From: Ranitomeya imitator
Lineage: Eukaryota
NCBI RefSeq assembly: GCF_032444005.1
Contig: NC_091283.1
Coordinates: 834,334,001-834,398,000, forward strand
DNA length: 64,000 nucleotides
Direction: 5' to 3'
Under the pieces are notes generated by a model, which saw nothing but the letters and a program-made list of their open reading frames with translations, ran no database searches and was not told where the DNA came from. A program made the position numbers and the translations under genes. This document shows positions 5,281 through 64,000 of the stretch, piece after piece. Position 1 is the stretch's first letter. Every line of letters starts with the position of its first letter.

Positions 5281-5334
5281 CCCCTGATCTCTGTACTATT
5301 AACTCTCTCTCCTCCCCTTGAACTCTGTCCGCAG

Positions 5335-5659: not shown

Positions 5660-8600
5660 GTAAGTGACTCGGTGCAAATACCGTCCTCAGGGAGAACTAC
5701 AAACCCCAGCACAGCAATAGAACATTGATCATAATAATAATAATCTTTATTTCTATAGCGCCAACATATTCCGCAGCGCTTTACAGTTTAACAGTTATCA
5801 TCGCTGGTTTCTTACAAGGATTCCTTAACGTTCAATTCTTGGCCGTTTTCAAGACCTCTGCTTGCTGGCAGTAAGATGTATCATTCATGTTTACGACTAG
5901 AAGCGGCTCCTACGTCTCACAGCTGAGCATTCGTTTCATTTGTGAGAAGTTTTGCCCTCCGAATGTAAACAGAAGGGTCCAATTCACCTGCAGCAAGCAG
6001 AGGTCTTAACATCAGTGAGAAGGAGACATGTTAAGCGGGAGATTCAGGTCTCGAAGCTGTGCTGCTCGCAGCAACCAATCACAGTGCAGCTTTCATTTAT
6101 TAAAAGCAGAATATGAAATGAAAGCTGCTCTCTGATTGGTTGCTATGGGTAACAAAGATGGCTTCATCAATCTCCCTCAGAGCTTTTCAGAAAGTGATTA
6201 TTCCGGATTTCCTGACGCCTTTAATTTTTTTTTGTGTCTTTTCTTGCAGATCTCAAAGCCTCTGGGAGAAGCCACAGAAGATGAGGTGAGCGCACCGCCG
6301 TTCAGCAGCACAGAGGGAATAAGCGCAGCCTTACTGCCTAGATTCTAGTGTTCTCTGTTATCAGGCTCTTTAACCCATTCCCGACATCAGCTGTATATCC
6401 AATGTCGGGGGTCCATTACTCAGCTGGCGCCTGCAACAGAGGGTAGCAATGGGGGCTGGTGCTGATCGCTGCTTTTTAACCCCTTAAATTGTAAATCCTT
6501 GAGAGCGACCTGTAGGGGGCGCCATCCCGGTGGTGTGCAGGCCTTATGGGAGACCGTCACTTCTGTCACCTACATCAGGACTGACGGATCAGGAAGCGAT
6601 CAACAATTGTTTTCAATGTTAAAATGTAATTTTTTTATTTTTATTTTTGCCAAAAAACAAAAAAGTTTGGACTTCCCTCCTACTTCCAATATGAAAGTAA
6701 AGAAAAATAAAAATAAACCTTTTTGGTTTTGCCGCTTCTATAACAGTCTGAAATATACAATTCACTATCCCAATGTGGCAAATGCCGTAAAAGCAAAAAA
6801 AAAATTACTTTTTTTTTTTTTTTTTTTTGGATGCCGCATTTACAAAAAAAAAAAAAAACGCAATAAAAAGTGAGCAAAACATTGTACGTACCTCCAAGAT
6901 GGCACCAATAAAAAGCGTCAGCTCAGCTCAGGGGACAATAAAAAAAACCATTAGCGAAATTGTGATTTTTATTTGTTTTTTTTATATCAGTACATTATAT
7001 GGCAAAGTGAACAGAACAGCGATGTGGATGGAAAAATAAAAAATGTTATGGCTCTATGGAAGGGGGGGGGAGGGCAAAAAATGAAAATGGATGATGGCGG
7101 CAGGATTGCAGCCGTTATTGTGCCTTTCTCTGTAATCCCGCTCTCCTTGCCGCCAGCTGGTGTCGGAGTTCCTGCAGTCCCGCGCGCCCTCCCTGCATAC
7201 TCGCGCTCCGCACACATTTAAGATGGACGGCCTCTTGGCGGAGATGCAGCAAATCGAGCAAAGCAGTTTCCGCCCCGAGCCGCTCAGAGGTAAGAACCAT
7301 CTCCGTCCTTCCATGTTCTTCTTCTTGGCATACTTTCTGTATCAGTTCCTCGCTTGCTGTCAGTGAGTGGAAGCCTTAGGGTATGTGCACACGCTGTGGA
7401 TTTTGCTGTGGATCCGCAGCGGATTTGACGCTGCGGATCCGCAGCAGTTTTCCCTAAGTTTACAGTACCATGTAAACCTATGGGAAAAAAAAACGCTGTG
7501 CGCATAAATCTGCGCGAAAAACGCTGCGGATTATTTTCCGCAGCATGTCCATTCTTTGTGCGGATTCTGCAGCAGTTTTACAACTGCACCAATAGGAAAA
7601 TGCAGTTGAAAATCCACAGTGGAATCCGCAGAAGAAACCGCAATAAAATCTGCAATGAAAACCGCAGTGGTTTTGCACTGCGGATTTTCTAAATCCGCTG
7701 CGGATAAATCCGCAGCAAAATCCGCAGCGTGGGCACATACCCTTAGTGCCCAGTGGCAAAAAAACAAACCCTTTTCCGATCATTGCCGACTGACATTGTA
7801 CCGAGCCGTGCAGCTGTCTGATCGGCAAGCTGTCCCTCCATACTTCCTCTCTTCCCTTGTTGTTCTGTAGCTCCTGGTGTCGCAGATCTCGCTCTCTCTG
7901 AACGCTGGACGGATGAGTTTCTTGAGCAAGAACCAGCGGTAGAGGAAGAAGACTGGAGCCGCGAGTTCATCGATCAGGCGGGTAAGGAATCTTCTCACTC
8001 TGGTGTCATGTGATCAGTGGTGTCCACCCTGTCAGGAAGCCAGCCGCGCTGCCCCCGTAATGGAGCCGGCCATCCTCAGTGCCCCCGTAATGGAGCCGGC
8101 CATCCTCGGTGCCTCTGTAATGGAGCCGGCCATCCTCGGTGCCTCTGTAATGGAGCCGGCCATCCTCGGTGCCTCTGTAATGGAGCCGGCCATCCTCGGT
8201 GCCTCTGTAATGGAGCCGGCCATCCTCGGTGCCTCCTGTAATGGAGCTGGCCATCCTCGGTGCCCCCCGTAATGGAGCTGGCCATCCTCAGTGCCCCCCG
8301 TAATGGGGCCGGCCATCCTCGGTGCCCTCTGTAATGGAGCCGGCCATCCTCGGTGCCTCCGTTACGGAATCAGCCATCCTCGGTGCCCCCATTATGGAGC
8401 TCGCCATCCTTGTGTCCCCATAATGGAGCCGGCCATCCTCGGTGCCCCCTGTAATGGAGCCGGCCATCCTCGGTGCCCCCTGTAATGGAGCCGGCCATCC
8501 TCGGTTCCCCCGTAACGGAGCCGGCCTTCCTCGGTGCCCCCCCTGTAATGGAGCTGGCCTTCCTCGGTGCCCCCCGTAATGCAGCCGGCCATCCTCGGTG

Positions 8601-11600
8601 CCTCCATTATGGAGAAGGCCATCCTTGTGCCCCCGTAATGGAGCCGGCCATCCTCGGTGCCCCCCGAAATGGAGCCGGCCATCCTCGGTGCCCCTTGTAA
8701 TGGAGCCGGCCATCCTCTGTGCCCCTTAAAGGAGCTGGCCTTCCTCGGTGCCCCCCGTTATGGAGCTGGCCATCCTCGGTGCCTCTGTTATGGAGCCGGC
8801 CATCCTCGGTGCCCCCCGTAATGGAGCCGGCCATCCTCGGTGCCCCCCGTAATGGAGCCGGCCATCCTCGGTGCCCCCCGTAATGGAGCCGGCCATCCTC
8901 GGTGCCCCCCGTAATGGAGCCGGCCATCCTCGGTGCCCCCCGTAATGGAGCCGGCCATCCTCGGTGCCCCCCGTAATGGAGCCGGCCATCCTCGGTGCCC
9001 CCCGTAATGGAGCCGGCCATCCTCGGTGCCCCCCGTAATGGAGCCGGCCACCCTCGGTGCCCCCCGTAATGGAGCCGGCCATCCTCGGTGCCCCCCGTAA
9101 TGGAGCCGGCCATCCTCGGTGCCCCCCGTAATGGAGCCGGCCATCCTCGGTGCCCCCCGTAATGGAGCCGGCCATCCTCGGTGCCCCCCGTAATGGAGCC
9201 GGCCATCCTCGGTGCCCCCCGTAATGGAGCCGGCCATCCTCGGTGCCCCCCGTAATGGAGCCGGCCATCCTCGGTGCCCCCCGTAATGGAGCCGGCCATC
9301 CTCGATGCCCCCCGTAATGGAGCCGGCCATCCTCGGTGCCCCCGTTACGGAGCTGGCCATCCTTGGTGCCCCCCTTAATGGAGCCGGCCATCCTCGGTGC
9401 TCCCCGTAATGGAGCCGGCCATCCTCAGTGCCTCTATTATGGAGCCGGTCATCCTTGGTACCTCTGTAATGGAGCCGGCCATCCTCGGTACCCCCCGTTA
9501 TGGAGCCGGCCATCCTTGGTACCCCCCGTTATGGAGCCGGCCATCCTCGGTGCCTCTGTTATGGAGCCGGCCATCCTCGGTGCCTCTGTTATGGAGCCGG
9601 CCATCCTCGGTGCCTCTGTTACGGAACCGGCCATCCCCGGTGCCTCTGTTACGGAGCCGGCCATCCTCGGTGCCTCTGTTATGGAACCGGCCATCCTCGG
9701 TGCCCCCGTTATGGAGCCGACCATCCTCTGTGCCCTCCGTTATGGAGCCGGCCATCCTCGGTGCCTCTGTTATGGAGCCGGCCATCCTCGGTGCCTCTGT
9801 TACGGAATCGGGCATGTTCGGTGCCCCCCATAACGGAGCCCACTTGCAAGTGATAATAGTGGAAATTTCATCAATATTCTTCTCTCTTACAAGACCCCCA
9901 CTCATCGCCGTCTCGCTGGGCAGAAGAATACCTCCAGCAATCAGAGGAGAAACTGTGGTTGGGAGAGAGCGAGGGAGTGATGGCGGAGAAATGGTGAGAA
10001 GCTGTCACAATGGTGAAGGGGCTTTGTGTTATTGGAGGGAGGTGGGACCCCTAATCCTCTACCACTGCCAGTCCCAGATAACCCACTGTACCATGTGAAT
10101 GGCCAGAAGGCATCATGTGACTGGTGGAGGGGGGCAGCCGCCTTCAGGGTAGTAGTAAAGTTGTCTGGGTTCTCATCTCCCCTCTAGAACAATGACTCCC
10201 ATCATTGTATGGATTCCTCTGTCTGCATTTTAATACATAATCCTTTCTTCCCCTCTTACAGGACGGAGGAGTACCAGCCTGACGATAACCTGCAGAAAGA
10301 AGCAAAATCTCTTGTTTCTAAAGTCAATGACCCTAAACTAGTTAACAGCCAGGTACAGGGAGGGCGGGTCAGGACGGGCTGTAGGTTGTAAATATGGTAT
10401 TAATCAATTTCATGACGATTTTTCTGACCATAATGTTCTCTCTCATTCCACGGCTCTTGAAGAAATATTTTTTTTCTGATACAGAGCTCCAAACCCCCTG
10501 CATAGATACAGCAATGATAAAATTATGCCTGCAGTCACCACTAGGGGGAGCTCGCTGCGTTCATTCAATAGTCAGCTCTGGAGCTCCCCCCAGTGGTGGC
10601 TACGGAGAATCTGCCATGGGCAAAACTATTCAATTTACGTGCAGATATAGGGTTAATCTGCAAGTAAATAGCATTAATATGAGCTTCCTCTATAATACTG
10701 GGGTCCATCAGGTGTAAGCTGTGCCCCCCATATTCGGCTCATAGCATGCCCCCCACTCCTCCACTGCCTTGTATCTGCATGTGTCAATGTCACTGTCTCC
10801 ATCTCTCTTTCTCTATCAGTTCTTACAATTTGTGAGGAAGATAGGAGACGGGGAGGTGTCTCTCTCGCAGACTCCAGGCGCTCCCTCCCAGACGGTCTCG
10901 CAGGCAGAGCAGTGGTCAGAACAGTTTATACAAGAGCAGGTAGTGACCCGCACCGAGGGGCGAGGATAGTGAGATCTGCCGTCCTTTTGTGCCTACATCA
11001 CCCTTAAAGGGATTATCCTATATTTTTTTTTTTTATTTATCAACTTTCCCATATAGTTTTTTTTTTTCACCTTTTTCAAAATTTCTGCTTGTTGTCAGTG
11101 AATAGAAATTCTCAAAACTTCCATAGATCTCATGCAGCTGTGCATTCGTTACAGTTGTACCCAGTCCTAGACTGATGAAACTGTAACAAAAACCCTCAGT
11201 TGCGAGAAGTAATAATGCAGCATGGCTGTTTAGTTTCTGAATGATTTTATTCACTGACAGCAAGCAGAAAAGGTGAAAATGGCATGAGAAAAGTGCAGCA
11301 CTTTATCTACGTAGAAATGGAAATCCTTTACTATCTTCACATTAATGGTCTGCAACCTTGGCCCCTCCAGCTGTGGGGGAAGGGGGACTACAACTCTCAG
11401 TCTCCAGCTGTAAAGATGTGCCAGAGGATGTAAGGGCATGCTGAGAGTTGTAGTGTCTCATAAGCTGACCATGATTTACTGGACCTGCATATAAAACAGG
11501 TTCTGTCTTTCCAGCTGACATTGATCGGCGTCTCGCTCACCGGATCCAATCTTCTGGTTCCCTTCTGCCGCTTGGGATGTCTGTATGCCACACTGTCCCC

Positions 11601-19970: not shown

Positions 19971-20019
19971 TCAGAACTGAACCCAGCTAGAAGACTGCGG
20001 AGCTTGAGAGGACAGACTG
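19971..20019 (-). CDS. NECAP1: NECAP1 exon 8 (last coding)
   Basis: (S)[15 protein letters not shown]-stop; pyrimidine tract followed by CAGCAG acceptor. Confidence 0.93.
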
Positions 20020-23000
20020 CTGGACAGAAGAGAGTGCAAGCAGGTGAAGCCTCAGTCATACATCGCACGGGCTGGAAGAACTGCAAGTCTCAGCATGCTG
20101 GAGTGGCCCCACCACCATCGATAATGCCCCGAGTGGAGCACAGAAGCCACGAGAGCAAGGTCAAGTTCAGAGTTGGTGGCAGCGAGACAGAAGAGGGCGC
20201 AACCCGGCCAAAGAGAAGAGGACAAACCGCTGCAGGGTTCTTGCCTTTATGTTAAAAAAAATCTTACTTTTCTGTAGACAGTTTTATTAAGATCACAATA
20301 TTATCCTGGGATTTTTGTGAATGAGAAATATCTATATTTATTTATTACAGAGCAACCACCAAGTGTGAACTTCACCCAAGATGACGCAGAGCCCAAATTC
20401 CCTGAACACCAGCACTTATTCCTATATACTCCAGAGCTGCAATCACTATTCTGCTGGTGCAGTCTCTGTGTACATACATTACTGATCCTGAGTTACATTC
20501 TGTATTATACCCCAGAGCTGCACTCACTATTCTGCTGGTGCAGTCACTGTGTACATATATTACATTACTGATCCTGAGTTACATCCTGTATTATACTCCA
20601 GAGCTGCACTCACTATTCTGCTGGTGCAGTCACTGTGTACATACATTACATTACTGATCCTGAGTTACATCCTGTATTATCCTCCAGAGCTGCACTCACT
20701 ATTCTGCTGGTGCAGTCACTGTGTACATACATTACATTACTGATCCTGAGTTACATCCTGTATTATACCCCAGAGCTGCACTCACTATTCTGCTGGTGCA
20801 GTCACTGTGTACATGCATTACATTACTGATCCTGAGTTACATCCTGTATTATACTCCAGAGCTGCACTCACTATTCTGCTGGTGCAGTCTCTGTGTACAT
20901 ACATTACATTACTGATCCTGAGTTACATCCTGTATTATACCCCAGAGCTGCACTCACTATTCTGCTGGTGCATTCACTGTGTACATACATTACATTACTG
21001 ATCCTGAGTTACATCCTGTATTATACTCCAGAGCTGCACTCACCATTCTGCTGGTGCAGTCACTGTGTACATACATTACATTACTGATCCTGAGTTACAT
21101 CCTGTATTATACTCCAGAGCTGCACTCACTATTCTGCTGGGGCAGTCACTGTGTACATACATTACATTACTGATCCTGAGTTACATCCTGTATTATACTC
21201 CAGAGCTGCACTCACTATTCTGCTGGTGCAGTCACTGTGTAACAAAAGGGGAGAAGCCAGCGCTGCTTGTGGTCAGAACGCAATACAAAAAGTGCAAATG
21301 CACATATTAATCTCTGACTGTATATCAAAATGAGACATTTAGCTAACAATTGATCAATTCTTTGAGCCACCCCACCACGTCACGGCATTCTCTTGGGGCA
21401 GTCCTGCTCTACGATTTTTATATTCGCTGTGCCATTACGGCCTCCTTAATATGTTAGGAGAAAGACCACGTTAGTCCCACTCTACGTTTTTTTTGTTTTA
21501 TGCTTGGACCTGGTTGACCGTTATTGTTGCATACCCTTTCTGGCGCCAAGGGAGTGATTCGGAAAAGCTACAGGTACGGTTTGCATTCTATATGTTCCCG
21601 CTTTTAACACATGTAGGAGGCCGTAATGGCACAGTGAATAAAACAAAAAAAACGTAGAGTGGGACTAACGTGGTCTTTCTCCTAACATATTAAGGAGGCC
21701 GTAATGGCACAGCGAATATAAAAATCGTAGAGCAGGACTGCCCCAAGAGAATGCCGTGACGTGGTGGGGTGGCTCAAAGAACTGATCAATTGTTTGCTAA
21801 ATGTCTTATTTTGATATACAGTCAGAGATTAATATGTGCATTTGCACTTTTTGTATTGCGTTCTGACCACATGCAGCGCTGGCTTCTCTCCTTTTGCAGT
21901 CACTGAGTACACACATTACATTACTGATCCCGAGTTACATCCTGTATTATACTCCAGAGCTGCACTCACTATTCTTCTGGTGTAGTCACTGTGTACATAC
22001 ATTACATTACTGATCCTGAGTAACATCCTGTATTATACTCTGGAGCTGTACTCACTATTCTGCTGGTGCAGTCACTGTGTACATACATTACATTACTGAT
22101 CCTGAGTTACCTCCTGTATTATACCCCAGAGCTGCACTCACTATTCTGCTGGTGCAGTCACTGTGTACATACATTACATTACTGATCCTGAGTTACATCC
22201 TGTATTATACCCCAGAGCTGCACTCACTATTCTAATGGTGCAGTCACTGTGTACATAAATTACATTACTGATCCTGAGTTACATCCTGTATTATACTCCA
22301 GAGCTGCACTCACTATTCTGCTGGTGCAGTCACTGTGTACATACATTACATTACTGATCCTGAGTTACATCCTGTATTATACTCCAGAGCTGCACTCACT
22401 ATTCTGCTGGTGCAGTCACTGTGTACATACATTACATTACTGATCCTGAGTTACATCCTGTATTATACTCCAGAGCTGCACTCACTATTCTGCTGGTGCA
22501 GTCACTGTGTACATACATTACTGATCCTGAGTTACCTCCTGTATTATACTCTGGAGCTGTACTCACTATTCTGCTGGTGCAGTCACTGTGTACATACATT
22601 ACATTACTGATCCTGAGTTACATCCTGTATTATACTCTGGAGCTGTACTCACTATTCTGCTGGTGCAGTCACTGTGTACATACATTACATTACTGATCCT
22701 GAGTTACATCCTGTATTATACTCCAGAGCTGCACTCACTATTCTGCTGGTGCAGTCACTGTGTACATACATTACGTTACTTATTCTCACCTGCTGGCAGT
22801 ATTAAAATCACCCCACAGGTCAGCGGAGGCAGGGGCAGCTTTAGGAGGTGGCAGCGGGGATCCCAAATCTAGCAGAATGTCTGGGGGAAAGAGATAAAAA
22901 AAAGTAATATTTAAATTCACCCCAATTAGCAATTTAATCATTTATGTCCACTAGGGGCGCTGCTTTGGAGGGTTACAGTTGCTGACAGGTTACAGCTGAA

Positions 23001-26000
23001 CACTGGGAATCAGCTTGTTGTTAGGTAACCATTCCTTAAAACAAGAAGGGTAAAGGACCCCTGACATATTTTCCAGTTTATAGCCCCTGCCCTTTTGGCT
23101 TTAGGATCCAATTTGCCAAAGAAGAGTGATTAAGTTTATGAGATGATATTTGTCTGGTGGGCGACCGGCGCACGTACCTGGGCCGGTGGGCGACCGGCGC
23201 ACGTACCTGGGCCGGTGGGCGACCGGCGCACGTACCTGGGCCGGTGGGCGACCGACGCACGTACCTGAGCCGGTGGGCGATCGTCGCACGTACCTGAGCT
23301 GGTGGGCAACGGGCGCACGTACCTGGGCTGGTGGGAAACGGGCGCACGTACCTGGGCTGGTGGGCGTGTTACTGGGGGGAGGAGTAACATGATTCGATAT
23401 TGGAGTCGTCAAGGTGGCAGTTGGTGTTGGGATCTTTCCACCAGGAGGAGGAGGAAGCAGAGCGATGCCCCCAGTGCCTGCATTCCCCCGGGGCTTACAG
23501 GAGCCATCTTTCTTCTTTATGTTCTGCTAAAAACACAAAAAAAAAAAAAAAGAGGTTTAAGAAATTGCAAGCATTTTTTTAAAGGAGTTTTGTAAAAACA
23601 GGAAACTATGCGCTCATCCTCTTATTAAAAATCATAGCGGGATTCCTAATTCTATAGTTTACCTCTTGTAGCCTTGGCTACCGGCCACTTCAGCAGTCTT
23701 ATCAGCGATGGCCGTCTCCTAGGCAAGGAGTGCAGCACTTACAAGCCCAGCTACTCTAAAGCTCATCCCAGCTTGAGGGTCCCTGTGCTCCACCAATTCC
23801 GTAGAGATAATGCAGCTTCTTTTTAAAGCTTGGGGGGAGCGTACCACTCAGACCACTGAAATAGGGAGCACAGTGCCCCCCACTGGCAACCAGGAAGTCA
23901 GGAGGACGGAGAGGGGCGCGTTGCCAAAGAAATAGGATGAGAACAAATTGACCCCACATAGGACCCCAAAGCGGAGCGGACATGACGCACATACCCCGAT
24001 GTTCAGCTTGATTGTCTGGCCTTCTTTAAATCCTAAATCCAGCTTGGGTTGATTGTCCTGCCCTTGAGGTTCTTTGGAGAAATCAGATTCCTGCTTCACC
24101 CACCTGTGAGAAGGAAAATGGCAGTATGACTTAGTTTCCTGACATTTTGTCACATTTCTATCAGTTCCTAGTGACAACTATTGCGGCGACCATTCCCCAT
24201 GTGGGGTGGTCCCAGAAAGCTCCCATATTACTTGGGTGTAAATCTGCCCAGTTCTGCAGGGACTCCTATAAGGACAGCGCAGCGCTGTCCCCTGTGGTGG
24301 CGGCCATACTGGTTGTCAGCTAGACAGGAAATGACAGGATCTGATGTTATTAGAGGGGTATTTCCGCCTGTAGGGTGATAGAACGTCACCACGTCACTAT
24401 AAATGGGGTCCGATCTCTGGGACCCCCAGCCAAGTGATGGAACAGGAGCAATGAGGGGGTCACACTGTATACTGCAAGTCTCCTTGTAGGTTTATATTCC
24501 TTACAAGTTGCAGGATTTTTACCAAAGAGTCAAATCTTATACAGGAAATTTTACTGCAAAAAAGAAAAAAAAAGACAAACAAATCCTGTTGTGGCATTAG
24601 AGGGGCACGGACTCGCGCTCACTTGAAGTGATCCTGTAAGGATACATTGAAGTCGAAAGCGTCCCCCCGATCTGCAAACCCGATGCCGATGAAGGCGCTT
24701 CTTCCTGGGGGAGAGAAGTAATGATGAGATGGAGGGAGACGCCGAGATGTGCGGACCCCGGGCTGCCCGTTACCCCACCCGTATGTATATCTGCAGTGCA
24801 CCCCATGGGGGGGGACGATTCCCAGAATTATCCATGAGGGAGGTTATTCCTGCCGTGATGTCATGGCTGCGGTGTGACACATGATGTTGTTAGGAGGCGG
24901 CGTGCAGGGCTTCTGTCCGGTGGCCATGGACTACTGAGGAGGCCGCTGGATCAGGGTCCTGCAAATTGACTCGCTCATCACCAGAATTAACCCTTTAAGG
25001 ACAAGTCCATATTTTTGCATAAGGGGCATGCTTCGTTTTATCTCCCCCATCTTGTACTCCAAATTGGGAAATTCTATTTCTACCAGGATGACATTTGTCC
25101 TGAAAGGGTTAAAGGGAGATCATCTGACAGAGAAGAGATTCTATTCCATCGGGGAGCCTCCTTCCTGACGCTTCCTCCACATCAGCACTTATCACTCACC
25201 GTTTCCGTCCTGAATCCTGATCACAAAGTAACGGCTGGAATCCGTCACCGTCTCCACCGCGATCCCGGGAAACTGATCCACCGGAGCCTGAGCAAAGAGC
25301 TCCCCTGGAGAGAGACGCGAGGTGTGAGGCAGATGGGGCCTCGCTGCAGGGACCGGCTATGACATGAATGGCCGCTCTGTAGGGATCAGTGTAGACCCCA
25401 TAGCGGCCCCCCGTGTGCTCAGCACAGACTGCAAGACCCGACAACGTCACCGAGGCTTGTGCATCCCTCCATCTCCACTAAGAGAAGAAGTCAGTGACCA
25501 GACAGATATCTGGGGTGTCAGCGTCCCACGCCCGCACTGTTACCCCCGACACGTCCATGTCATACCCCGCTCTGTATAATGAGGGGCGACAGCTCTCTAA
25601 TAGGCTCAATTCTTCACCATTTCCAAGATGTCTGATTGATGTCACTCAATAATCCCTCCCCGAAAAAAGGAGGCGACGGGGCAGAGAGGGAGGAGAATAG
25701 AAAGCGGGCGCAGAGGGAGGGATAAGATGACAGGAGGTGTAATGGGGGGGTGAGATGACGGGAGGTGTAGTGGGGGGGTGAGATGACGGGAGGTGTAGTG
25801 GGGGGGTGAGATGACGGGAGGTGTAGTGGGGGGGTGAGATGACGGGAGGTGTAGTGGGGGGGTGAGATGACGGGAGGTGTAGTGGGGGGGTGAGATGACA
25901 GGAGGTGTAGTGGGGGGTGAGATGATGGGAGGTGTAGTGGGGGGGGTGAGATGATGGGAGGTGTAGTGGGGGGGGGGGGTGAGATGATGGGAGGTGTAGT

Positions 26001-29000
26001 GGGGGGTGAGATGATGGGAGGTGTAGTGGGGGGTGAGATGATGGGAGGTGTAGTGGGGGGGGTGAGATGATGGGAGGTGTAGTGGGGGGGGTGAGATGAT
26101 GGGAGGTGCAGTGGGGGGGGGGTGAGATGATGGGAGGTGTAGTGGGGGGTGAGATGATGGGAGGTGTAGTGGGGGGTGAGATGATGGGAGGTGTAGTGGG
26201 GGGTGAGATGATGGGAGGTGTAGTGGGGGGGTGAGATGACGGGATGTGTAGTGGGGGGGGTGAGATGACGGGAGGTGTAGTGGGGGGTGAGATGACGGGA
26301 GGTGTAGTGGGGGGGGTGAGATGATGGGAGGTGTAGTGGGGGGGGTGAGATGATGGGAGGTGTAGTGGGGGGGGGGTGAGATGATGGGAGGTGGGGGGGG
26401 GGGGTGAGATGATGGGAGGTGCAGTGGGGGGTGAGATGATGGGAGGTGTAGTGGGGGGTGAGATGATGGGAGGTGTAGTGGGGGGTGAGATGATGGGAGG
26501 TGTAGTGGGGGGTGAGATGATGGGAGGTGTAGTGGGGGGGTGAGATGATGGGAGGTGTAGTGGGGGGGTGAGATGATGGGAGGTGTAGTGGGGGGGTGAG
26601 ATGATGGGAGGTGTAGTGGGGGGGTGAGATGATGGGAGGTGTAGTGGGGGGTGAGATGATGGGAGGTGTAGTGGGGGGTGAGATGATGGGAGGTGTAGTG
26701 GGGGGTGAGATGATGGGAGGTGTAGTGGGGGGGTGAGATGATGGGAGGTGTAGTGGGGGGGTGAGATGATGGGAGGTGTAGTGGGGGGGTGAGATGATGG
26801 GAGGTGTAGTGGGGGGGTGAGATGATGGGAGGTGTAGTGGGGGGGTGAGATGATGGGAGGTGTAGTGGGGGGGGGTGAGATGATGGGAGGTGCAGTGGGG
26901 GGTGAGATGATGGGAGGTGTAGTGGGGGGTGAGATGATGGGAGGTGTAGTGGGGGGTGAGATGATGGGAGGTGTAGTGGGGGGTGAGATGATGGGAGGTG
27001 TAGTGGGGGGTGAGATGATGGGAGGTGCAGTGGGGGGTGAGATGATGGGAGGTGTAGTGGGGGGTGAGATGATGGGAGGTGTAGTGGGGGGTGAGATGAT
27101 GGGAGGTGTAGTGGGGGGTGAGATGATGGGAGGTGTAGTGGGGGGTGAGATGATGGGAGGTGTAGTGGGGGGTGAGATGATGGGAGGTGTAGTGGGGGGT
27201 GAGATGATGGGAGGTGTAGTGGGGGGTGAGATGATGGGAGGTGCAGTGGGGGGTGAGATGATGGGAGGTGTAGTGGGGGGTGAGATGATGGGAGGTGTAG
27301 TGGGGGGTGAGATGATGGGAGGTGTAGTGGGGGGTGAGATGATGGGAGGTGCAGTGGGGGGTGAGATGATGGGAGGTGCAGTGGGGGGTGAGATGATGGG
27401 AGGTGCAGTGGGGGGTGAGATGACGGGAGGTGTAGTGGGGGGTGAGATGATGGGAGGTGCAGTGGGGGGGGGGGGTGAGATGATGGGAGGTGTAGTGGGG
27501 GGTGAGATGATGGGAGGTGTAGTGGGGGGGGTGAGATGACGGGAGGTGTAGTGGGGGGGGTGAGATGATGGGAGGTGTAGTGGGGGGTGAGATGATGGGA
27601 GGTGTAGTGGGGGGGGTGAGATGACGGGAGGTGTAGTGGGGGGTGAGATGATGGGAGGTGTAGTGGGGGGTGAGATGATGGGAGGTGCAGTGGGGGGGGG
27701 GGGGTGAGATGATGGGAGGTGTAGTGGGGGGTGAGATGATGGGAGGTGTAGTGGGGGGGGTGAGATGACGGGAGGTGTAGTGGGGGGGGTGAGATGATGG
27801 GAGGTGTAGTGGGGGGTGAGATGATGGGAGGTGTAGTGGGGGGTGAGATGATGGGAGGTGTAGTGGGGGGGGTGAGATGACGGGAGGTGTAGTGGGGGGT
27901 GAGATGATGGGAGGTGTAGTGGGGGGTGAGATGATGGGAGGTGTAGTGGGGGGTGAGATGATGGGAGGTGTAGTGGGGGGGGGGGGTGAGATGATGGGAG
28001 GTGCAGTGGGGGGTGAGATGATGGGAGGTGTAGTGGGGGGTGAGATGATGGGAGGTGCAGTGGGGGGTGAGATGATGGGAGGTGCAGTGGGGGGTGAGAT
28101 GATGGGAGGTGTAGTGGGGGGTGAGATGATGGGAGGTGTAGTGGGGGGTGAGATGATGGGAGGTGTAGTGGGGGGTGAGATGATGGGAGGTGTAGTGGGG
28201 GGTGAGATGATGGGAGGTGTAGTGGGGGGTGAGATGATGGGAGGTGTAGTGGGGGGTGAGATGATGGGAGGTGTAGTGGGGGGTGAGATGATGGGAGGTG
28301 TAGTGGGGGGTGAGATGATGGGAGGTGTAGTGGGGGGTGAGATGATGGGAGGTGTAGTGGGGGGTGAGATGATGGGAGGTGTAGTGGGGGGTGAGATGAT
28401 GGGAGGTGTAGTGGGGGGTGAGATGATGGGAGGTGTAGTGGGGGGTGAGATGATGGGAGGTGTAGTGGGGGGTGAGATGATGGGAGGTGTAGTGGGGGGT
28501 GAGATGACGGGAGGTGTAGTGGGGGGGTGAGATGATGGGAGGTGTAGTGGGGGGTGAGATGACGGGAGGTGTAGTGGGGGGGGGTGAGATGATGGGAGGT
28601 GTAGTGGGGGGTGAGATGATGGGAGGTGTAGTGGGGGGGGTGAGATGATGGGAGGTGTAGTGGGGGGGTGAGATGACGGGAGGTGTAGTGGGGGGGGGTG
28701 AGATGATGGGAGGTGTAGTGGGGGGGTGAGATGACGGGAGGTGTAGTGGGGGGGGTGAGATGACGGGAGGTGTAGTGGGGGGTGAGATGATGGGAGGTGT
28801 AGTGGGGGGGTGAGATGACGGGAGGTGTAGTGGGGGGGGGTGAGATGATGGGAGGTGTAGTGGGGGGGTGAGATGACGGGAGGTGTAGTCGGGGTTGTCG
28901 GTACCTGACACCTTGTCCTCCAGTTTGATGAAGGCCACTTTCCCCTTGGAGGTCAGCCGCATCCTCCCTGTCCAGTCCGGCTGATCCAGCTTCCAGTCCG

Positions 29001-32224: not shown

Positions 32225-35200
32225 AACAAATACAAGCCCAGAACCCCCAAATATAGACCCCGCAACCAGCCCCTATAAACAAATACCAAACCCAGACCCC
32301 CCAAATATAGACCCTGCAACCAGCCACTATAAACTAATACCAAACCCAGACCCTCCAAATATATACAACACAACCAGCCCCTATAAACAAATACAAAACC
32401 CAGACCCTCCAAAAATAGACCCTGCAACCAGCCACTATAAGAAAATACAAAACCCAGACCCTCCAAATATATACAACACAACCAGCCCCTATAAACAAAT
32501 ACAAACCCAGAACCTCCAAATATATACAACGCAACCAGCCCCTATAAACAAATACAAACCCAGAACCTCCAAATATAGACCCCACAACCAGCCCCTGTAA
32601 ACAAATGTAAAACCCAGACCCTCCAAATATATACAACGCAACCAGCCCCTATAAACAAATACAAAACCCAGAACCCCCAAATATAGACCCCGCAACCAGC
32701 CCCTATAAACAAATACAAACACAGAACCTCCAAATATATACAACACAACCAGCCCCTGTAAACAAATACAAAACCCAGACCCTTCAAATATAGACCCCGC
32801 AACCAGCCCCTATAAACATATACAAGCCCAGACCCTCCAAATATAGACCCCGCAACCAGCCCCTAAAAACAAATACAAGCCCAGACCCTCCAAATATATA
32901 CAACACAACCAGCCCCTATAAACAAATACAAAACCCAGACCCTTCAAATATAGACCCCACAACCAGCCCCTATAAACAAATACAAAACCCAGACCCTCCA
33001 AATATAGACCCCACAACCAGCCCCTGTAAACAAATGTAAAACCCAGACCCTCCAAATATATACAACACAACCAGCCCCTATAAACAAATACAAAACCCAG
33101 ACCCTTCAAATATATACAACACAACCAGCCCCTATAAACAAATACAAAACCCAGACCCTTCAAATATAGACCCCACAACCAGGCCCTATAAACAAATACA
33201 AAACCCAGACCCTCCAAATATAGACCCCACAACCAGCCCCTGTAAACAAATGTAAAACCCAGACCCTCCAAATATATACAACACAACCAGCCCCTATAAA
33301 CAAATACAAAACCCAGACCCTTCAAATATATACAACACAACCAGCCCCTATAAACAAATACAAAACCCAGACCCTCCAAATATAGACCCTGCAACCAGCC
33401 CCTATAAACAAATACAAAACCCAGACCCTCCAAATATATACAACACAACCAGCCCCTGTAAACAAATACAAAACCCAGACCCTTCAAATATATACAACAC
33501 AACCAGCCCCTATAAACAAATACAAAACCCAGACCCTTCAAATATAGACCCCACAACCAGCCCCTATAAACAAATACAAAACCCAGACCCTCCAAATATA
33601 GACCCTGCAACCAGCCCCTATAAACAAATACAAAACCCAGACCCTCCAAATATATACAACACAACCAGCCCCTGTAAACAAATACAAAACCCAGACCCTT
33701 CAAATATATACAACACAACCAGCCCCTATAAACAAATACAAAACCCAGACCCTTCAAATATAGACCCCACAACCAGCCCCTATAAACAAATACAAAACCC
33801 AGACCCTCCAAATATAGACCCTGCAACCAGCCCCTATAAACAAATACAAAACCCAGACCCTCCAAATATATACAACACAACCAACCCCTGTAAACAAATA
33901 CAAAACCCAGACCCTTCAAATATAGACCCCGCAACCAGCCCCTATAAATAAATACAAGCCCAGACCCTCCAAATATATACAACACAACCAGCCCCTATAA
34001 ACAAATACAAAACCCAGACCCTTCAAATATAGACCCCACAACCAGCCCCTATAAACAAATACAAAACCCAGACCCTTCAAATATATACAACACAACCAGC
34101 CCCTATAAACAAATACAAAATCCAGACCCTTCAAATATAGACCCCACAACCAGCCCCTATAAACAAATACAAAACCCAGACCCTCCAAATATAGACCCTG
34201 CAACCAGCCCCTATAAACAAATACAAAACCCAGACCCTCCAAATATATACAACACAACCAGCCCCTATAAACAAATACAAAACCCAGACCCTTCAAATAT
34301 ATACAACACAACCAGCCCCTATAAACAAATACAAAACCCAGACCCTTCAAATATAGACCCCACAACCAGCCCCTATAAACAAATACAAAACCCAGACCCT
34401 CCAAATATAGACCCTGCAACCAGCCCCTATAAACAAATACAAAACCCAGACCCTCCAAATATATACAACACAACCAGCTCCTGTAAACAAATACAAAACC
34501 CAGACCCTCCAAATATATACAACACAACCAGCCCCTGTAAACAAATACAAAACCCAGACCCTCCAAATATATACAACACAACCAGCCCCTGTAAACAAAT
34601 ACAAAACCCAGACCCTCCAAATATATACAACACAACCAGCCCCTATAAACAAATACAAAACCCAGACCCTTCAAATATAGACCCCACAACCAGCCCCTAT
34701 AAACAAATACAAAACCCAGACCCTCCAAATATAGACCCCACAACCAGCCCCTGTAAACAAATGTAAAACCCAGACCCTCCAAATATATACAACACAACCA
34801 GCCCCTATAAACAAATACAAAACCCAGACCCTTCAAATATATACAACACAACCAGCCCCTATAAACAAATACAAAATCCAGACCCTTCAAATATAGACCC
34901 CACAACCAGCCCCTATAAACAAATACAAAACCCAGACCCTCCAAATATAGACCCTGCAACCAGCCCCTATAAACAAATACAAAACCCAGACCCTCCAAAT
35001 ATATACAACACAACCAGCCCCTATAAACAAATACAAAACCCAGACCCTTCAAATATATACAACACAACCAGCCCCTATAAACAAATACAAAACCCAGACC
35101 CTTCAAATATAGACCCCACAACCAGCCCCTATAAACAAATACAAAACCCAGACCCTCCAAATATAGACCCTGCAACCAGCCCCTATAAACAAATACAAAA

Positions 35201-37290
35201 CCCAGACCCTCCAAATATATACAACACAACCAACCCCTGTAAACAAATACAAAACCCAGACCTCCAAATATATACAACATAACCAGCCCCTGTAAACAAA
35301 TACAAAACCCAGACCCTCCAAATATATACAACACAACCAGCCCCTGTAAACAAATACAAAACCCAGACCCTTCAAATATAGACCCCACAACCAGCCCCTA
35401 TAAACAAATACAAAACCCAGACCCTTCAAATATAGACCCTGCAACCAGCCCCTATAAACAAATACAAAACCCAGACCCTCCAAATATATACAACACAACC
35501 AGCCCCTGTAAACAAATACAAAACCCAGACCCTTCAAATATAGACCCCACAACCAGCCCCTATAAACAAATACAAAACCCAGACCCTCCAAATATAGACC
35601 CTGCAACCAGCCCCTATAAACAAATACAAAACCCAGACCCTCAAAATATATACAACACAACCAGAGCCCCTATAAACAAATACAAAACCCAGACCCTCAA
35701 AATATATACAACACAACCAGCCCCTGTAAACAAATACAAAACCCAGACCCTCAAAATATATACAACACAACCAGCCCCTGTAAACAAATACAAAACCCAG
35801 ACCCTTCAAATATAGACCCGGCAACAAGCCCCTATAAATAAATACAAAACCCAGACCCTCCAAATATAGCCCCCACATCCAGCCCCTATAAACAAATACA
35901 AACCGAGACCCTCCAAATATATACAACACAACCAGCCCCTATAAACAAATACAAAACCCAGACCCTCCAAATATAGACCCTGCAACCAGCCCCTATAAAC
36001 AAATACAAACCGAGACCCTCCAAATATATACAACACAACCAGCCCCTGTAAACAAATACAAAACCCAGACCCTCCACATATATACAACACAACCAGCCCC
36101 TGTAAACAAATACAAACCGAGACCCTCCAAATATAGACCCCACAACCAGCCCCTATAAACAAATACAAAACCCAGACCCTTCAAATATAGACCCGGCAAC
36201 AAGCCCCTATAAATAAATACAAAACCCAGACCCTCCAAATATAGACCCTGCAACCAGCCCCTATAAACAAATACAAAACCCAGACCCTCCAAATATATAC
36301 AACACAACCAACCCCTGTAAACAAATACAAAACCCAGACCCTTCAAATATATACAACACAACCAGCCCCTGTAAACAAATACAAAACCCAGACCCTTCAA
36401 ATATAGACCCCACAACCAGCCCCTGTAAAAAAATACAAAACCCAGACCCTCCAAATATAGACCCTGCAACCAGCCCCTATAAACAAATACAAAACCCAGA
36501 CCCTCCAAATATATACAACACAACCAACCCCTGTAAACAAATACAAAACCCAGACCCTTCAAATATAGACCCCACAACCAGCCCCTGTAAACAAATACAA
36601 AACCCAGACCCTTCAAATATAGACCCCACAACCAGCCCCTGTAAACAAATACAAAACCCAGACCCTTCAAATATAGACCCCACAACCAGCCCCTATAAAC
36701 AAATACAAAACCCAGACCCTTCAAATATAGACCCGGCAACAAGCCCCTATAAATAAATACAAAACCCAGACCCTCCAAATATAGCCCCCACATCCAGCCC
36801 CTATAAACAAATACAAACCGAGACCCTCCAAATATAGACCCCACAACCAGCCTCTGTAAACAAATACAAACCCAGACTGCAGACCAGACCCCTTAGACAC
36901 ATACTAACCCAGACCACTCCCCTAAACAAATACTAACCCAGACCCTCCAAATACAGATCCCAGACCACTCCCCTTAACAAATACAGACCCCTAAACAAAT
37001 ACTAACCCAGACCCTCCAAATACAGACCCCAGAACAACCCCTCTAAACAAATATAAACCCAAATCCTTCTCCAAACACGGACCCTTTAAATACATAACTT
37101 AGATCAACCCCCTTAGTAAATAAAAACCCAAACCCTTCAAACACAGACCCCACCCTAAATAAAGACTCCAGGACAGACCCCTATACAAAGAGTAACCCAG
37201 ACCAGACCCTTCAAGGAATGCAAACCCAAACCAGCCCCTTTAATAAGAGCAAACCCAGATCCTCCAAGAACAGACCCAGATCATATAGAA
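32225..37290. repeat. 54-nt AC-rich minisatellite (CAGCCCCTATAAACAAATACAAAACCCAGACCCTCCAAATATA[TACAACAC/GACCCCAC]AAC)n
   Basis: Homogeneous to about 36870 (about 86 units, several alternating variants), degenerate to about 37290. Confidence 0.95.
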
Positions 37291-42870: not shown

Positions 42871-44505
42871 GGGTAGAGTGGTATACAGAGATGAGGAGGA
42901 AACGTAGGGCAGTGCAGCACTGTAGAGGGGATGGGTAGGGTGGTAGAAAGAGATGAGGAGATGTAGGGCAGTGAAGCACTGTGGAGGAGATGGGTAGGTT
43001 GGTAGAGAAAGAAGAGGAGATGTAGGTGGGTGGTGCAGCACTGAGGAGAGGACAGGTAGGGTTGGTAGACAGAGATGAGGAGATGTAGGGCGGTGCAGCA
43101 CTGTGGAGAGGAGGGTAGGGTGTTAGATAAGGAGGAGATGTAGGGCGGTGCAGCACTGTGGAGAGACCAGGTAGGGTGATAGACAGATGAGGAGGAGATG
43201 TAGGGCTGTGCAGCACTGTGGAGAGGACGGGTAGGGTGGTAGACAGATGAGGAGGAGATGTAGGGCTGTGCAGCACTGTGGAGAGGACAGGTAAGGTGCT
43301 AGAGATGAAGAGGAGATGTAGGGTGGTGCACCACTGTGGAGAGGACGGGTAGGGTGGTAGACAGATGAGGAGGAGATGTAGGGTGGTGCAGGACTGTGGA
43401 GAGGACAGGTAGGGCGGTAGCCAGATAAGGAGGAGATGTAGGACGGTGCAGCACTGTGGAGAGGATGGGTAGGGTGGTAGACAGATAAGGAGGAGATGTA
43501 GGGTGGTGCAGCACTGTGGAGAGGACAGGTAGGGTGGTAGACGGATGAGGAGGAGATGTAGGGGGGTGCAGCACTGTGGAGAGGACGAGTATTGTGGTAG
43601 ACAGACGAGGAGGAGATGTAGGGGGTGCAGCACTGTGGAGAGGACGGGTAAGGTGTTAGAGATGAGGAGGAGATGTAGGGTGGTGCAGCACTGTGGAGAG
43701 GATGGGTAAGGTGTTAGAGATGAGGAGGAGATGTAGGGCGGTGCAGCACTGTGGAGAGATCGGGTAAGGTGTTAGAGATGAGGAGGAGGAGATGTAGGGT
43801 GGTACAGCACTGTGGAGAGGACGGGTAAGGTGTTAGAGATGAGGAGGAGATGTAGGGTGGTACAGCACTGTGGAGAGGACGGGTAAGGTGTTAGAGATGA
43901 GGAGGAGATGTAGGGCGGTGCAGCACTGTGGAGAGAACGGGTAAGGTGTTAGAGATGAGGAGGAGGAGATGTAGGGTTGTACAGCACTGTGGAGAGGACG
44001 GGTAAGGTGTTAGAGATGAGGAGGAGATGTAGGGTGGTACAGCACTGTGGAGAGAACGGGTAAGGTGTTAGAGATGAGGAGGAGGAGATGTAGGGTGGTA
44101 CAGCACTGTGGAGAGAACGGGTAAGGTGTTAGAGATGAGGAGGAGATGTAGGGTGGTACAGCACTGTGGAGAGAACGGGTAAGGTGTTAGAGATGAGGAG
44201 GAGGAGATGTAGGGTGGTACAGCACTGTGGAGAGAACGGGTAAGGTGTTAGAGATGAGGAGGAGATGTAGGGTGGTACAGCACTGTGGAGAGGACGGGTA
44301 AGGTGTTAGAGATGAGGAGGAGATGTAGGGCGGTGCAGCACTGTGGAGAGGACGGGTAAGGTGTTAGAGATGAGGAGGAGATGTAGGTGGTGCAGCACTG
44401 TGGAGAGAACGGGTATTGTGGTAGACAGACGAGGAGGAGATGTAGGGCGGTGCAGCACTGTGGAGAGGACGGGTAGGGTGGTAGACAGATGAGCAGATGT
44501 AGGAC
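42871..44505. repeat. 58-61-nt minisatellite, probably derived from L2 ORF2
   Basis: About 28 units of GATGAGGAGGAGATGTAGGGTGGTGCAGCACTGTGGAGAGGACGGGTAGGGTGGTAGACA; the minus strand encodes LHSAAPPYISSSSVYHPTRP. Confidence 0.9.
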
Positions 44506-47014: not shown

Positions 47015-47358
47015 ACGAGACGATGCAGGACACGGCAGGAACTTAGGACTGGGCAGGACACGGCAGGAACACAGGACTTGGCAGGATACGGCAGGAACAC
47101 GGAACTTGGCAGGACACAGCAGGAACACGGAACTTGGCAGGACACAGCAGGAACACGGAACTTGGCAGGACACAGCAGGAACACGGAACTTGGCAGGACA
47201 CAGCAGGAACACGGAACTTGGCAGGACACAGCAGGAACACGGAACTTGGCAGGACACAGCAGGAACACGGAACTTGGCAGGACACAGCAGGAACACGGAA
47301 CTTAGCAGGACACAGCAGGAACACGGAACTAGGCAGGACACAGCAGGAACACAGGACT
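47015..47358. repeat. 28-nt repeat (GCAGGACACAGCAGGAACACGGAACTTG)n
   Basis: About 12 units, probably within an LTR-derived segment. Confidence 0.9.
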
Positions 47359-47440
47359 AGGCAAAGAGAGAACTAAGCAGGGAAAAGATACAAATACTGG
47401 GGAGCCTAGGGCATAGGGACACTGACGGCAGACAGTGCAC

Positions 47441-47999
47441 CTACACTCTAATCTCTATACCATACACTCTATACCCTACACTCTATAACATACATTCTAC
47501 ACCCTACAATCTATACCATACACTCTATACCCTACACTCTACACTCTATACCATACACTCTATACCCTACACTCTACACTTTATACCCTACACTCTATAC
47601 CCTACACTCTATAACCTACACTCTATACCCTACACGCTATACCCTACACACTATACCCTACACTCTATACCCTACACTATATACCCTACACTCTACACCC
47701 TACACTCTATACCCTACACCCTATACCCTACACTCTATACCCTAATCTCTACACCCTACACTCTATACCCTATACTCTATACCCTACACTCTATACCCTA
47801 CACTCTACACTCTATACCCTACACTCTATACCCTACACTCTATACCATACACTCTATACCATACACTTTATCCCCTACACTCTATACCATACACTCTACA
47901 CTCTATACCCTACACTCTATACCCTACACTCTGCACTCTATACCCTACGCTCTATAACCTACACTCTACACTCTATACCCTACACTCTACACTCTATAC
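47441..47999 (+). repeat. 14-bp satellite, C-rich orientation (CCCTACACTCTATA)n
   Basis: Direct inspection. Confidence 0.95.
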
Positions 48000-48000
48000 T

Positions 48001-62900: not shown

Positions 62901-64000
62901 CCTTACCATACACTCTATACCCTACACTCTATACCTCACACTCTACACTCTATCCCCTACAGTCTACACTCTATACCCTACACTCTATACCCTACAATCT
63001 ATACCATACACTCTATACCATACACTCTATACCCTACCCTCTATACCCTACACCCTACAATCTATACCATACACTCTATACCATACACTCTATACCCTAC
63101 ACTCTATACCTCACACTCTACACTCTATCCCCTGCACTCTATTACCATGCACTCTACACTCTATACCCTACACTCTATACCCTACACTCTACACTCTATA
63201 CCTTACACTCCATACCCTACACGCTATACCATACACTCTATACCATACACTCTATACCCTACACTCTATACCATACACTCTACACTATATACCCTACACT
63301 CTATACCCTACAATCTACACTCTATACACTACACTCTATACCCTACACTCTACACTCTATACCCTACGCTCTATACCATACACTCTATACCCTAAACTCT
63401 ATACCATACACACTATACCCTACACTCTATACCCTACACTCTATACCCTACACTCTATACGCTACACTCTACACTCTATACCCTACACCTTATACTCTAC
63501 ACTCTATACCCTACACTCTATACCCTACACTCTATACCATACACTCTATACCCTACACTCTACACTCTATACCTTACACTCAATACCCTACACTCTATAC
63601 CCTACACTCTATACCCTACACTCTACACTCTATACCCTAAACTCTACACTCTATACTCTACACTCTACAACATACACTCTATACCCTACACTTTATACTC
63701 TACACTCTATACCCTACACTCTACACACTATACCCTACACTCTATACCATACACTCTACACCCTACACTCTATACCCTACACTCTATACCCTACACTCTA
63801 TACCATACACTCTAATCTCTATACCATACACTCTATACCCTACACTCTCTAACATACATTCTACACCCTACAATCTATACCATACACTCTATACCCTACA
63901 CTCTACACTCTATACCATACACTCTATACCCTACACTCTACACTTTATACCCTACACTCTATACCCTACACTCTATAACCTACACTCTATACCCTACACG
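59996..64000 (+). repeat. 14-bp satellite, C-rich orientation (runs off the window)
   Basis: Strand switch at TGTATACA 59992-59999. Confidence 0.97.
60458..60563 (+). mobile_element. L2-type short retroposon inserted in satellite
   Basis: GATTGTGAGCCCC...TGTAAAGCGCTGCGGAATATGTTAGCGCTATATAAAAATAAAG(ATT)n. Confidence 0.75.

What the first reader, a model, noticed from the sequence alone, without database searches (positions are those of the whole stretch)
23157..23365. NECAP1 exon 6 splice donor multiplied seven times by a 29-nt minisatellite
Seen: the repeat unit spans the exon/intron junction, so the minus strand carries seven donors identical from -3 to +6 (CAG|GTACGT). They give exon ends at 23352, 23323, 23294, 23265, 23236, 23207 and 23178. 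The reading frame stays open through the array. Donors 4 and 7 are in frame (+29 and +58 aa, starting [14 protein letters not shown]...); the other four alternative donors frameshift and would lose the C-terminal WVQF. Established: the NECAP C-terminal WxxF motif binds the AP-2 alpha ear. Inference: VNTR copy number could set the ratio of productive, extended and truncated or NMD isoforms, i.e. a repeat-encoded splicing rheostat.
Basis: partly seen in the sequence, partly recalled or inferred. Interest (0 to 1): 0.78.

Follow-up and report, generated by a model that had tools for sequence, protein, structure and literature searches.

The report
Splice-donor minisatellite in frog NECAP1 intron
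A 29-base repeat that grew out of the exon 6/intron 6 boundary of the NECAP1 gene of the mimic poison frog really does place seven identical splice-donor signals in a row, but the transcripts I could see use only the first one, as in the known human cases (F7, IFI6, CBS).

Summary
Window 23156-23366 holds a 29-nt tandem repeat (7.3 copies) whose first unit spans the exon 6/intron 6 junction of NECAP1 on the minus strand. This gives seven CAG|GTACGT donors exactly 29 nt apart. Donors 4 and 7 are in frame (+29 and +58 aa). Donors 2, 3, 5 and 6 shift the frame and hit a stop in exon 7.

The window is Ranitomeya imitator. The array is real and variable:
- a second R. imitator assembly has 24 copies;
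- R. variabilis has about 25 copies of a 28-nt version;
- Dendrobates tinctorius, Phyllobates terribilis and Engystomops pustulosus have a single donor.

The "splicing rheostat" reading gets no support:
- the only junction seen is first donor 23352 to acceptor 22880, in a spliced cDNA contig;
- every gene model I could see joins ...TPTSP to DILLDL;
- no database protein carries array-encoded peptide.

Contigs cannot exclude rare isoforms.

The kind is already described. Minisatellites whose first monomer spans an exon/intron border are known in human F7, IFI6, CBS, LMNB2 and PDGFA. In F7 only the most upstream donor is used (PMC1557585). This is therefore a new member of a known kind.

This scan has already noted six other donor-derived minisatellites elsewhere in the same genome.

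The parts
23156..23366 (-). 29-nt minisatellite, 7.3 copies. The first unit is the last 14 nt of exon 6 plus the first 15 nt of intron 6.
   Evidence: TRF; unit register; unit not found elsewhere in the window
23352..23526 (-). NECAP1 exon 6 (175 nt, or 172 nt from the downstream CAG of a TAG|CAG tandem acceptor). It encodes (Q)[57 protein letters not shown].
   Evidence: tblastn; cDNA contig X1 record 1 covers 23352-23524
23346..23354 (-). Authentic donor 1, CAG|GTACGT (positions -3 to +6). It is the only donor seen joined to exon 7.
   Evidence: Joint 22880<->23352, skips 471 nt, GT..AG on the minus strand, depth 34. The orthologous donor in four other frogs lies at the same exon position.
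23172..23325 (-). Six pseudo-donors (donors 2-7), each CAG|GTACGT. If used, the exon would end at 23323, 23294, 23265, 23236, 23207 or 23178.
   Evidence: predicted products; no joint from any of them in four runs
22881..23351 (-). Intron 6 as spliced (471 nt). The 3' 297 nt are conserved in Ranitomeya and partly in Dendrobates and Phyllobates.
22790..22880 (-). NECAP1 exon 7 (91 nt), (D)[29 protein letters not shown].
23995..24103 (-). NECAP1 exon 5 ([36 protein letters not shown]).
   Evidence: cDNA contig joins 23995 to exon 6
19971..20019 (-). Coding part of exon 8 (tandem CAG|CAG acceptor), ending ...SSWVQF and a stop.

Best explanation
This is a lineage-specific, GC- and CpG-rich minisatellite that arose in the genus Ranitomeya by tandem duplication of a 28-29-nt segment spanning the NECAP1 exon 6 donor. 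It lengthens and shortens by slippage or unequal exchange among its identical 3' units. Functionally it lies inside intron 6. The splicing machinery takes the most upstream of the identical 5' splice sites, through 5'-to-3' oriented selection or exon definition. The six (elsewhere 23-24) downstream copies are then removed with the intron as silent pseudo-donors. Such an array is tolerated because first-site selection makes the extra donors nearly harmless.

Shown here: the repeat, its copy-number difference between two assemblies, its restriction to Ranitomeya among the species sampled, and use of donor 1 in the transcripts and gene models seen.

Inferred: that the pseudo-donors are silent or nearly so, and the mechanism by which the first site is chosen.
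For: - Structure and exact 29-nt register.
- Species: the window's exon 6 peptide is identical to R. imitator NECAP1 isoform X4. The gene has a PHear domain, PF07933, E 2e-60, and matches PDB NECAP1 and NECAP2 chains.
- Second R. imitator assembly (L002): 24.3 copies. The first four variant units are shared and the excess lies in the homogeneous 3' units.
- R. variabilis (L005): 25.4 copies of a 28-nt unit; donor 1 is GTACGT and the repeats are GTGCGT.
- D. tinctorius, P. terribilis and E. pustulosus: a single donor and no repeat.
- A separate sequencing run (X2) has a contig lying inside the array and carrying the variant seen in L002.
- Transcripts: a spliced contig (which must be cDNA, since it lacks introns 5 and 6) joins 23995|23524...23352|22880 at depth 34.
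- Gene models: R. imitator X4 and the model of the second assembly, R. variabilis X1-X3, D. tinctorius X1-X3 and P. terribilis X1, X2, X4 and X5 are 257-268 aa. All read TPTSP-DILLDL. They differ mainly by one Q and one S, at the places where the window has tandem NAGNAG acceptors.
- No protein of 77-465 aa in 5.8 billion clusters carries array peptide.
- Predicted RNA accessibility does not distinguish donor 1 from the others, as was also found for F7.
- Precedent: in F7 IVS7, with 5-9 identical donors, only the most upstream is used. [quoted passage not shown]
Against: - The transcript evidence is thin: one contig in one run. Contigs drop rare variants, and 31-mer contigs handle 29-nt repeats badly.
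- Frameshifted products of donors 2 and 5 (and perhaps 3 and 6) would be degraded by nonsense-mediated decay, so they would be under-represented even if made.
- In two of the known human cases (IFI6, CBS) the two nearest pseudo-sites are used as well.
- The donors here match the consensus at 8 of 9 positions, better than F7's 6 of 9.
- I did not see R. imitator isoforms X1-X3. I infer they are the other NAGNAG combinations.
Confidence: 0.75

Rival explanations
1. Low-level constitutive use of the nearest pseudo-donors, as in IFI6 and CBS. Donors 2 and 3 (and perhaps 4) would be used in a minority of transcripts, giving mostly degraded frameshifted mRNAs and a rare +29-aa isoform, regardless of copy number.
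For: [quoted passage not shown] Donor 2 is identical to donor 1 from -13 to +15. Donors match the consensus at 8 of 9 positions. Stops lie 79 or 51 nt before the last junction, so decay could hide these products.
Against: No such joint appears in four runs. No gene model or database protein carries array peptide.
Confidence: 0.2
2. One reading: array length (7 versus 24 or more units) shifts the share of productive, extended (+29 or +58 aa) and degraded NECAP1 mRNA, so NECAP1 dosage is tuned by copy number.
For: Copy number does vary strongly within the species. A CBS 31-bp repeat at an exon/intron border has been reported to be associated with reduced enzyme activity (Lievers 2001, known to me only from its title in the reference list of PMC1557585).
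Against: Only donor 1 was seen in use. R. variabilis, with about 25 donors, has a longest recorded product of 268 aa. In F7 the downstream sites do not compete at all, so adding more of them should change nothing. The variation lies at the 3' end of the array, furthest from the site in use.
Confidence: 0.06
3. Assembly artefact: the genome has one donor and the array was created or miscounted by the assembler.
For: Identical 29-nt units are the kind of sequence that assemblers collapse or expand, so the exact counts of 7 and 24 each rest on one assembly.
Against: The array is present in two independent R. imitator assemblies, in R. variabilis, and in a contig of a separate sequencing run that spans about 4.5 units.
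Confidence: 0.02
4. The array has a function of its own in the intron. It could be a cluster of U1 snRNP binding sites that strengthens definition of exon 6 or suppresses premature polyadenylation, or an intragenic CpG-rich island.
For: There are 7-25 strong U1-complementary sites, and each unit contains several CpG dinucleotides. An array has been kept at this place in two Ranitomeya species.
Against: The array is absent in Dendrobates, Phyllobates and Engystomops, whose exon 6 is spliced the same way. Copy number is unconstrained (7 versus 24). The units are homogenised within each species, which is typical of neutral minisatellite turnover.
Confidence: 0.05

Closest known systems
Human F7 intron 7 37-bp VNTR (Borensztajn et al. 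2006, PLoS Genet, PMC1557585)
   Same: The first monomer spans the exon/intron boundary. The authentic donor is followed by identical pseudo-donors. Copy number is polymorphic (5-9). Only the most upstream donor is used. RNA structure does not explain the choice.
   Different: Different gene and a frog rather than a human. The unit is 29 nt with 14 exonic nt (F7: 37 nt with 4 exonic nt). The copy range seen is wider (7-24) and the donors match the consensus better (8/9 versus 6/9). Silence of the pseudo-sites was shown by mutagenesis in F7; here it is only inferred from one cDNA contig and gene models.
Human IFI6 (6-16) intron 2 minisatellite (Turri et al. 1995, as cited in PMC1557585)
   Same: A minisatellite supplies many tandem donors (the authentic one plus 25).
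   Different: In IFI6 the two nearest pseudo-sites are constitutively used. No such use was seen here.
Human CBS exon 13/intron 13 31-bp VNTR (Yang et al. 2000; Lievers et al. 2001, as cited in PMC1557585)
   Same: Similar unit length (31 versus 29 nt). It lies at an exon/intron border and is polymorphic (15-20 copies). It is the nearest published analogue of a copy-number effect.
   Different: In CBS two pseudo-sites are reported to be used and an association with enzyme activity has been claimed. Neither is shown for NECAP1.
Human LMNB2 (100-bp) and PDGFA (81-bp) junction-reiterating repeats (as cited in PMC1557585)
   Same: The exon/intron junction is reiterated and only the authentic donor is used.
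   Different: The units are much longer.

Membership tests
Donor-reiterating minisatellite (F7 IVS7 type) | Tandem array whose first monomer spans an exon/intron boundary | tested here: met
   The unit is 14 nt of exon 6 plus 15 nt of intron 6. The exon part is homologous to the exon end of four other frogs.
Donor-reiterating minisatellite (F7 IVS7 type) | [quoted passage not shown] | tested here: met
   Seven CAG|GTACGT sites, 29 nt apart.
Donor-reiterating minisatellite (F7 IVS7 type) | Copy number is polymorphic | tested here: met
   7.3 copies in the window against 24.3 in assembly GCA_958301615.1 of the same species. Each count rests on one assembly.
Donor-reiterating minisatellite (F7 IVS7 type) | Only the most upstream donor (or the first few) is used | tested here: inconclusive
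   The only junction seen is 23352|22880, and all gene models use it. Contigs cannot exclude minor use of the pseudo-donors.
NECAP1 (adaptin ear-binding coat-associated protein 1) | N-terminal PHear domain (Pfam PF07933) | tested here: met
   P0081, whose exons match the window, hits PF07933 with E 2e-60 and PDB 1tqz NECAP1 with E 5e-82.
NECAP1 (adaptin ear-binding coat-associated protein 1) | C-terminal WVQF motif and orthology to annotated NECAP1 | tested here: met
   WVQF followed by a stop at 19985-19971. Best hits are annotated NECAP1 of dendrobatid frogs.
Coding VNTR (repeat translated as part of the protein) | Repeat period is a multiple of 3 and repeat peptide is present in the protein | tested here: not met
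   The period is 29 nt (28 in R. variabilis). No database protein carries array peptide. The array ORF has no Pfam match.
Regulated tandem alternative 5' splice sites | Two or more of the tandem donors are seen joined to the downstream exon | tested here: not met
   One joint only in four runs. This is limited by contig-level data.

The most novel reading that the evidence does not exclude
Array length matters after all. Long alleles (24 or more donors) would divert a measurable share of NECAP1 pre-mRNA to pseudo-donors, producing degraded or extended isoforms. NECAP1 dosage would then vary between R. imitator individuals or colour morphs with repeat length. More broadly, the several donor-derived minisatellites noted in this genome could reflect a mutational process that targets 5' splice sites rather than chance seeding in a repeat-rich genome.
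Probability: 0.08. Interest if true: 0.55.

Novelty: new member of a known kind. Interest (0 to 1): 0.3.

Why it matters
The case adds a non-mammalian, highly variable example (7 to about 25 identical, strong donors) to the small set of natural arrangements used to ask how the spliceosome chooses among identical 5' splice sites. The F7 work was done in mammalian cells. A frog gene with stronger donors and a wider copy range is a natural test of whether "first site wins" is general in vertebrates. If other notes of this scan hold, R. imitator carries many such arrays and would be a convenient genome for a systematic test. For NECAP1 biology itself, the most likely answer is that nothing changes.

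Tried and rejected
- Structural masking of the pseudo-donors. The local unpaired probability of each 9-mer donor is equally low for donor 1 and all the others in three arrays, so I rejected this as an explanation.
- Difference in donor strength. Donors 1-7 are identical in the window. In the other alleles donor 1 differs by one base, with a similar U1 duplex energy. This is no explanation either.
- A dispersed repeat family or transposon as the source of the array. The unit occurs nowhere else in the window and its 5' half is the conserved exon end. Rejected.
- Exhaustive HMMER search with the 141-aa read-through ORF. It returned only NECAP-like hits to the exon 6 part and low-complexity noise. 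Two hits to the array part (P0009, P0015) are translations of unrelated repeats. P0015 lies on a 1.7-kb ENA metagenome contig of unknown origin, which I did not pursue.
- R. imitator isoforms X1-X3 could not be displayed, and the RefSeq gene record could not be fetched through isoform X4.
- The IFI6 paper (PMC306954) is not held. It is cited only through PMC1557585.
- Runs X2, X15 and X9 gave no exon contigs. A filter removes human-like conserved exons, so they say nothing about donor choice.

Full report
**1. The observation**

On the minus strand, the end of an exon and the start of the next intron are repeated head to tail. Tandem Repeats Finder gives 23156-23366, period 29, 7.3 copies, 92% matches. 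A script finds GTACGT seven times at exact 29-nt spacing, each preceded by CAG. The possible exon ends are 23352, 23323, 23294, 23265, 23236, 23207 and 23178. Donors 1 and 2 share every base from -13 to +15.

The consensus unit has no chance matches in shuffled sequence and occurs nowhere else in the window.

The exon 6 frame is open through the array. This needs only that the GC-rich unit lacks TAA, TAG and TGA, so it is not evidence of coding.

I spliced each donor to exon 7 and exon 8 in silico:
- Donors 4 and 7 are in frame (+29 and +58 aa).
- Donors 2 and 5 stop in exon 7, 79 nt before the last junction.
- Donors 3 and 6 stop in exon 7, 51 nt before the last junction.
- Donors 2, 3, 5 and 6 all lose the C-terminal WVQF.

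**2. The gene and the species**

Motif scans and tblastn place eight coding exons of a NECAP1 gene on the minus strand, between about 29171 and 19971. The array follows exon 6. The product has the PHear domain (PF07933, E 2e-60). It matches solved NECAP1 and NECAP2 chains.

The closest proteins are NECAP1 of dendrobatid poison frogs. The exon 6 peptide is identical to Ranitomeya imitator isoform X4, XP_069610294.1. The window is therefore R. imitator.

**3. Is the array real, and how old is it?**

I fetched the NECAP1 locus from five other assemblies.

| Assembly | Locus | Array | Donors |
|---|---|---|---|
| R. imitator, window | - | 29 nt, 7.3 copies | 7 x CAG\|GTACGT |
| R. imitator, GCA_958301615.1 | L002 | 29 nt, 24.3 copies | donor 1 CAG\|GTATGT, then 23 x CAG\|GTACGT |
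| R. variabilis | L005 | 28 nt, 25.4 copies | donor 1 GTACGT, then 24 x GTGCGT |
| D. tinctorius | L003 | none | single |
| P. terribilis | L004 | none | single, plus one degenerate copy reading GC instead of GT |
| E. pustulosus | L001 | none | single |

- In L002, intron 6 is 965 nt against 471 nt in the window. The first four variant units are shared, and the excess lies in the homogeneous 3' units.
- In all Ranitomeya alleles the array sits directly between the donor and a conserved 3' part of the intron.
- One run (X2) yields a contig lying within the array that carries a variant also seen in L002.

So the array is not an assembly artefact. It arose in or before the genus Ranitomeya, is homogenised within each species, and varies greatly in length.

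**4. Which donor is used?**

- Of four runs laid on 22790-24180, one (X1) gave a 296-nt contig at depth 34. It joins 24024..23995 to 23524..23352 and then to 22880..22790.
- Because this contig lacks introns 5 and 6, it is cDNA, and it uses donor 1.
- No joint from donors 2-7 appeared.
- The other runs gave only intronic pieces. Their exon contigs may have been removed by the tool's filter, so they say nothing on donor choice.

Gene models agree:
- Those seen are R. imitator X4 and the model of the second assembly, R. variabilis X1-X3, D. tinctorius X1-X3 and P. terribilis X1, X2, X4 and X5.
- They are 257-268 aa and all read TPTSP-DILLDL across this junction.
- They differ mainly by one Q and one S, at the places where the window has tandem NAGNAG acceptors before exons 6 and 8. 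P. terribilis X5 also has a different C-terminus.
- For R. variabilis the collection records only a gene's longest product. The 268-aa isoform is on record and the 267-aa one is not.

Searches of 5.8 billion protein clusters found nothing that covers the array-encoded peptide. I used the read-through ORF and full-length frog NECAP1 as queries, covering lengths of 77-465 aa.

Limits of this evidence:
- Contigs show presence, not absence.
- 31-mer contigs cope badly with 29-nt repeats.
- Frameshifted products would be partly removed by nonsense-mediated decay.
- I did not see R. imitator X1-X3.

**5. Mechanism**

Nothing in the sequence distinguishes donor 1 from the others:
- the sites are identical;
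- their U1 duplex energies are the same;
- the predicted unpaired probability is equally low for all donors in all three arrays.

Position is what differs. This is the situation analysed experimentally for human F7. The first 37-bp monomer of its intron 7 VNTR spans the exon 7 boundary, giving five to nine identical donors. Only the most upstream is used. The pseudo-sites are functional when the upstream ones are destroyed, and pseudo-sites raised to a consensus value of 91 still do not compete. The authors conclude that selection is oriented 5' to 3' (PMC1557585).

That paper lists further junction-reiterating minisatellites:
- IFI6 (authentic donor plus 25 pseudo-sites; the two nearest are also used);
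- CBS (31-bp unit, 15-20 copies; two pseudo-sites are used);
- LMNB2 and PDGFA (authentic site only).

My best explanation (confidence 0.75) is that the NECAP1 array is an intronic minisatellite whose extra donors are silent or nearly so, because the first site is taken.

The main rival (0.2) is IFI6/CBS-like minor use of donors 2-3. The copy-number rheostat (0.06) is least compatible with the precedent. The variation lies at the far end of the array, and downstream sites do not compete in F7.

**6. Context**

More than half of this window (about 33 of 64 kb) consists of tandem arrays. The published R. imitator assembly is about 50% repeats (bioRxiv 10.1101/706671).

Two other NECAP1 introns carry arrays that begin about 10 nt after their donors.

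The scan's notebook lists six more donor-derived minisatellites elsewhere in this genome: EMC1, LRRC36, AK7, BSPRY and two at an "exon 9". I have not checked these. I found the F7 precedent by literature search before I saw those notes.

In a genome this rich in minisatellites, some arrays will be seeded at exon/intron borders. They will be tolerated if first-site selection makes them harmless. Whether they are commoner than chance is an open, testable question.

**7. Verdict**

- The gene and exon naming are right.
- The repeat is real and strongly polymorphic.
- The functional reading is unsupported and, by precedent, unlikely.
- The kind is already described, so this is a new member of a known kind, of modest interest (0.3).
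- Its value is mainly as a natural test case for 5' splice-site choice outside mammals.

Noticed in passing
window 23524-23529 and 20017-20022 (minus strand): Tandem NAGNAG acceptors lie before exon 6 (TAG|CAG) and exon 8 (CAG|CAG). They match the plus/minus Q and plus/minus S differences among the 266-268-aa NECAP1 isoforms annotated in dendrobatid frogs. The X1 cDNA contig appears to use the upstream exon 6 acceptor.
   Followed up: partly
window 25725-28894: NECAP1 intron 2 is almost filled by a 27-nt minisatellite (114 copies), C-rich on the transcribed strand, that starts about 11 nt after the exon 2 donor. It has 70 copies in the second R. imitator assembly, 31 (28-nt unit) in R. variabilis and about 200 in D. 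tinctorius. P. terribilis has a 29-nt array of about 12 copies at the corresponding place.
   Followed up: partly
window 21895-22780 and 20425-21241: Two arrays of an 86-nt unit lie in intron 7. The first begins 10 nt after the exon 7 donor. The same element forms arrays at the orthologous place in P. terribilis (41 copies) and at several places in the E. pustulosus locus, so it is an old dispersed frog repeat.
   Followed up: partly
window 23415: T>G on the plus strand in the X1 cDNA contig changes Thr to Pro in exon 6 (TATL to TAPL). The same allele is in the second R. imitator assembly's protein (CAJ0932503.1). This is a missense polymorphism in the disordered linker.
   Followed up: partly
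window 49307-63999: About 14.7 kb of a 14-nt satellite (TAGGGTATAGAGTG) switches to its reverse complement at about 59997. This gives a GC skew of +0.97 and then -0.97.
   Followed up: no
window 2400-5282, 8052-9840, 32225-36877, 42887-44503, 47025-49296: Further large minisatellites have periods of 30, 31, 54, 58, 28, 14 and 197 nt. Together with the arrays above, about 33 kb of the 64-kb window (52%) is tandem repeat.
   Followed up: no
L004 6118-6180 (P. terribilis intron 6): Directly after the single donor there is one degenerate second copy of the junction (CCCAG followed by GCACGC) with GC in place of GT. It could be a decayed duplicate or the seed state of the Ranitomeya array.
   Followed up: partly
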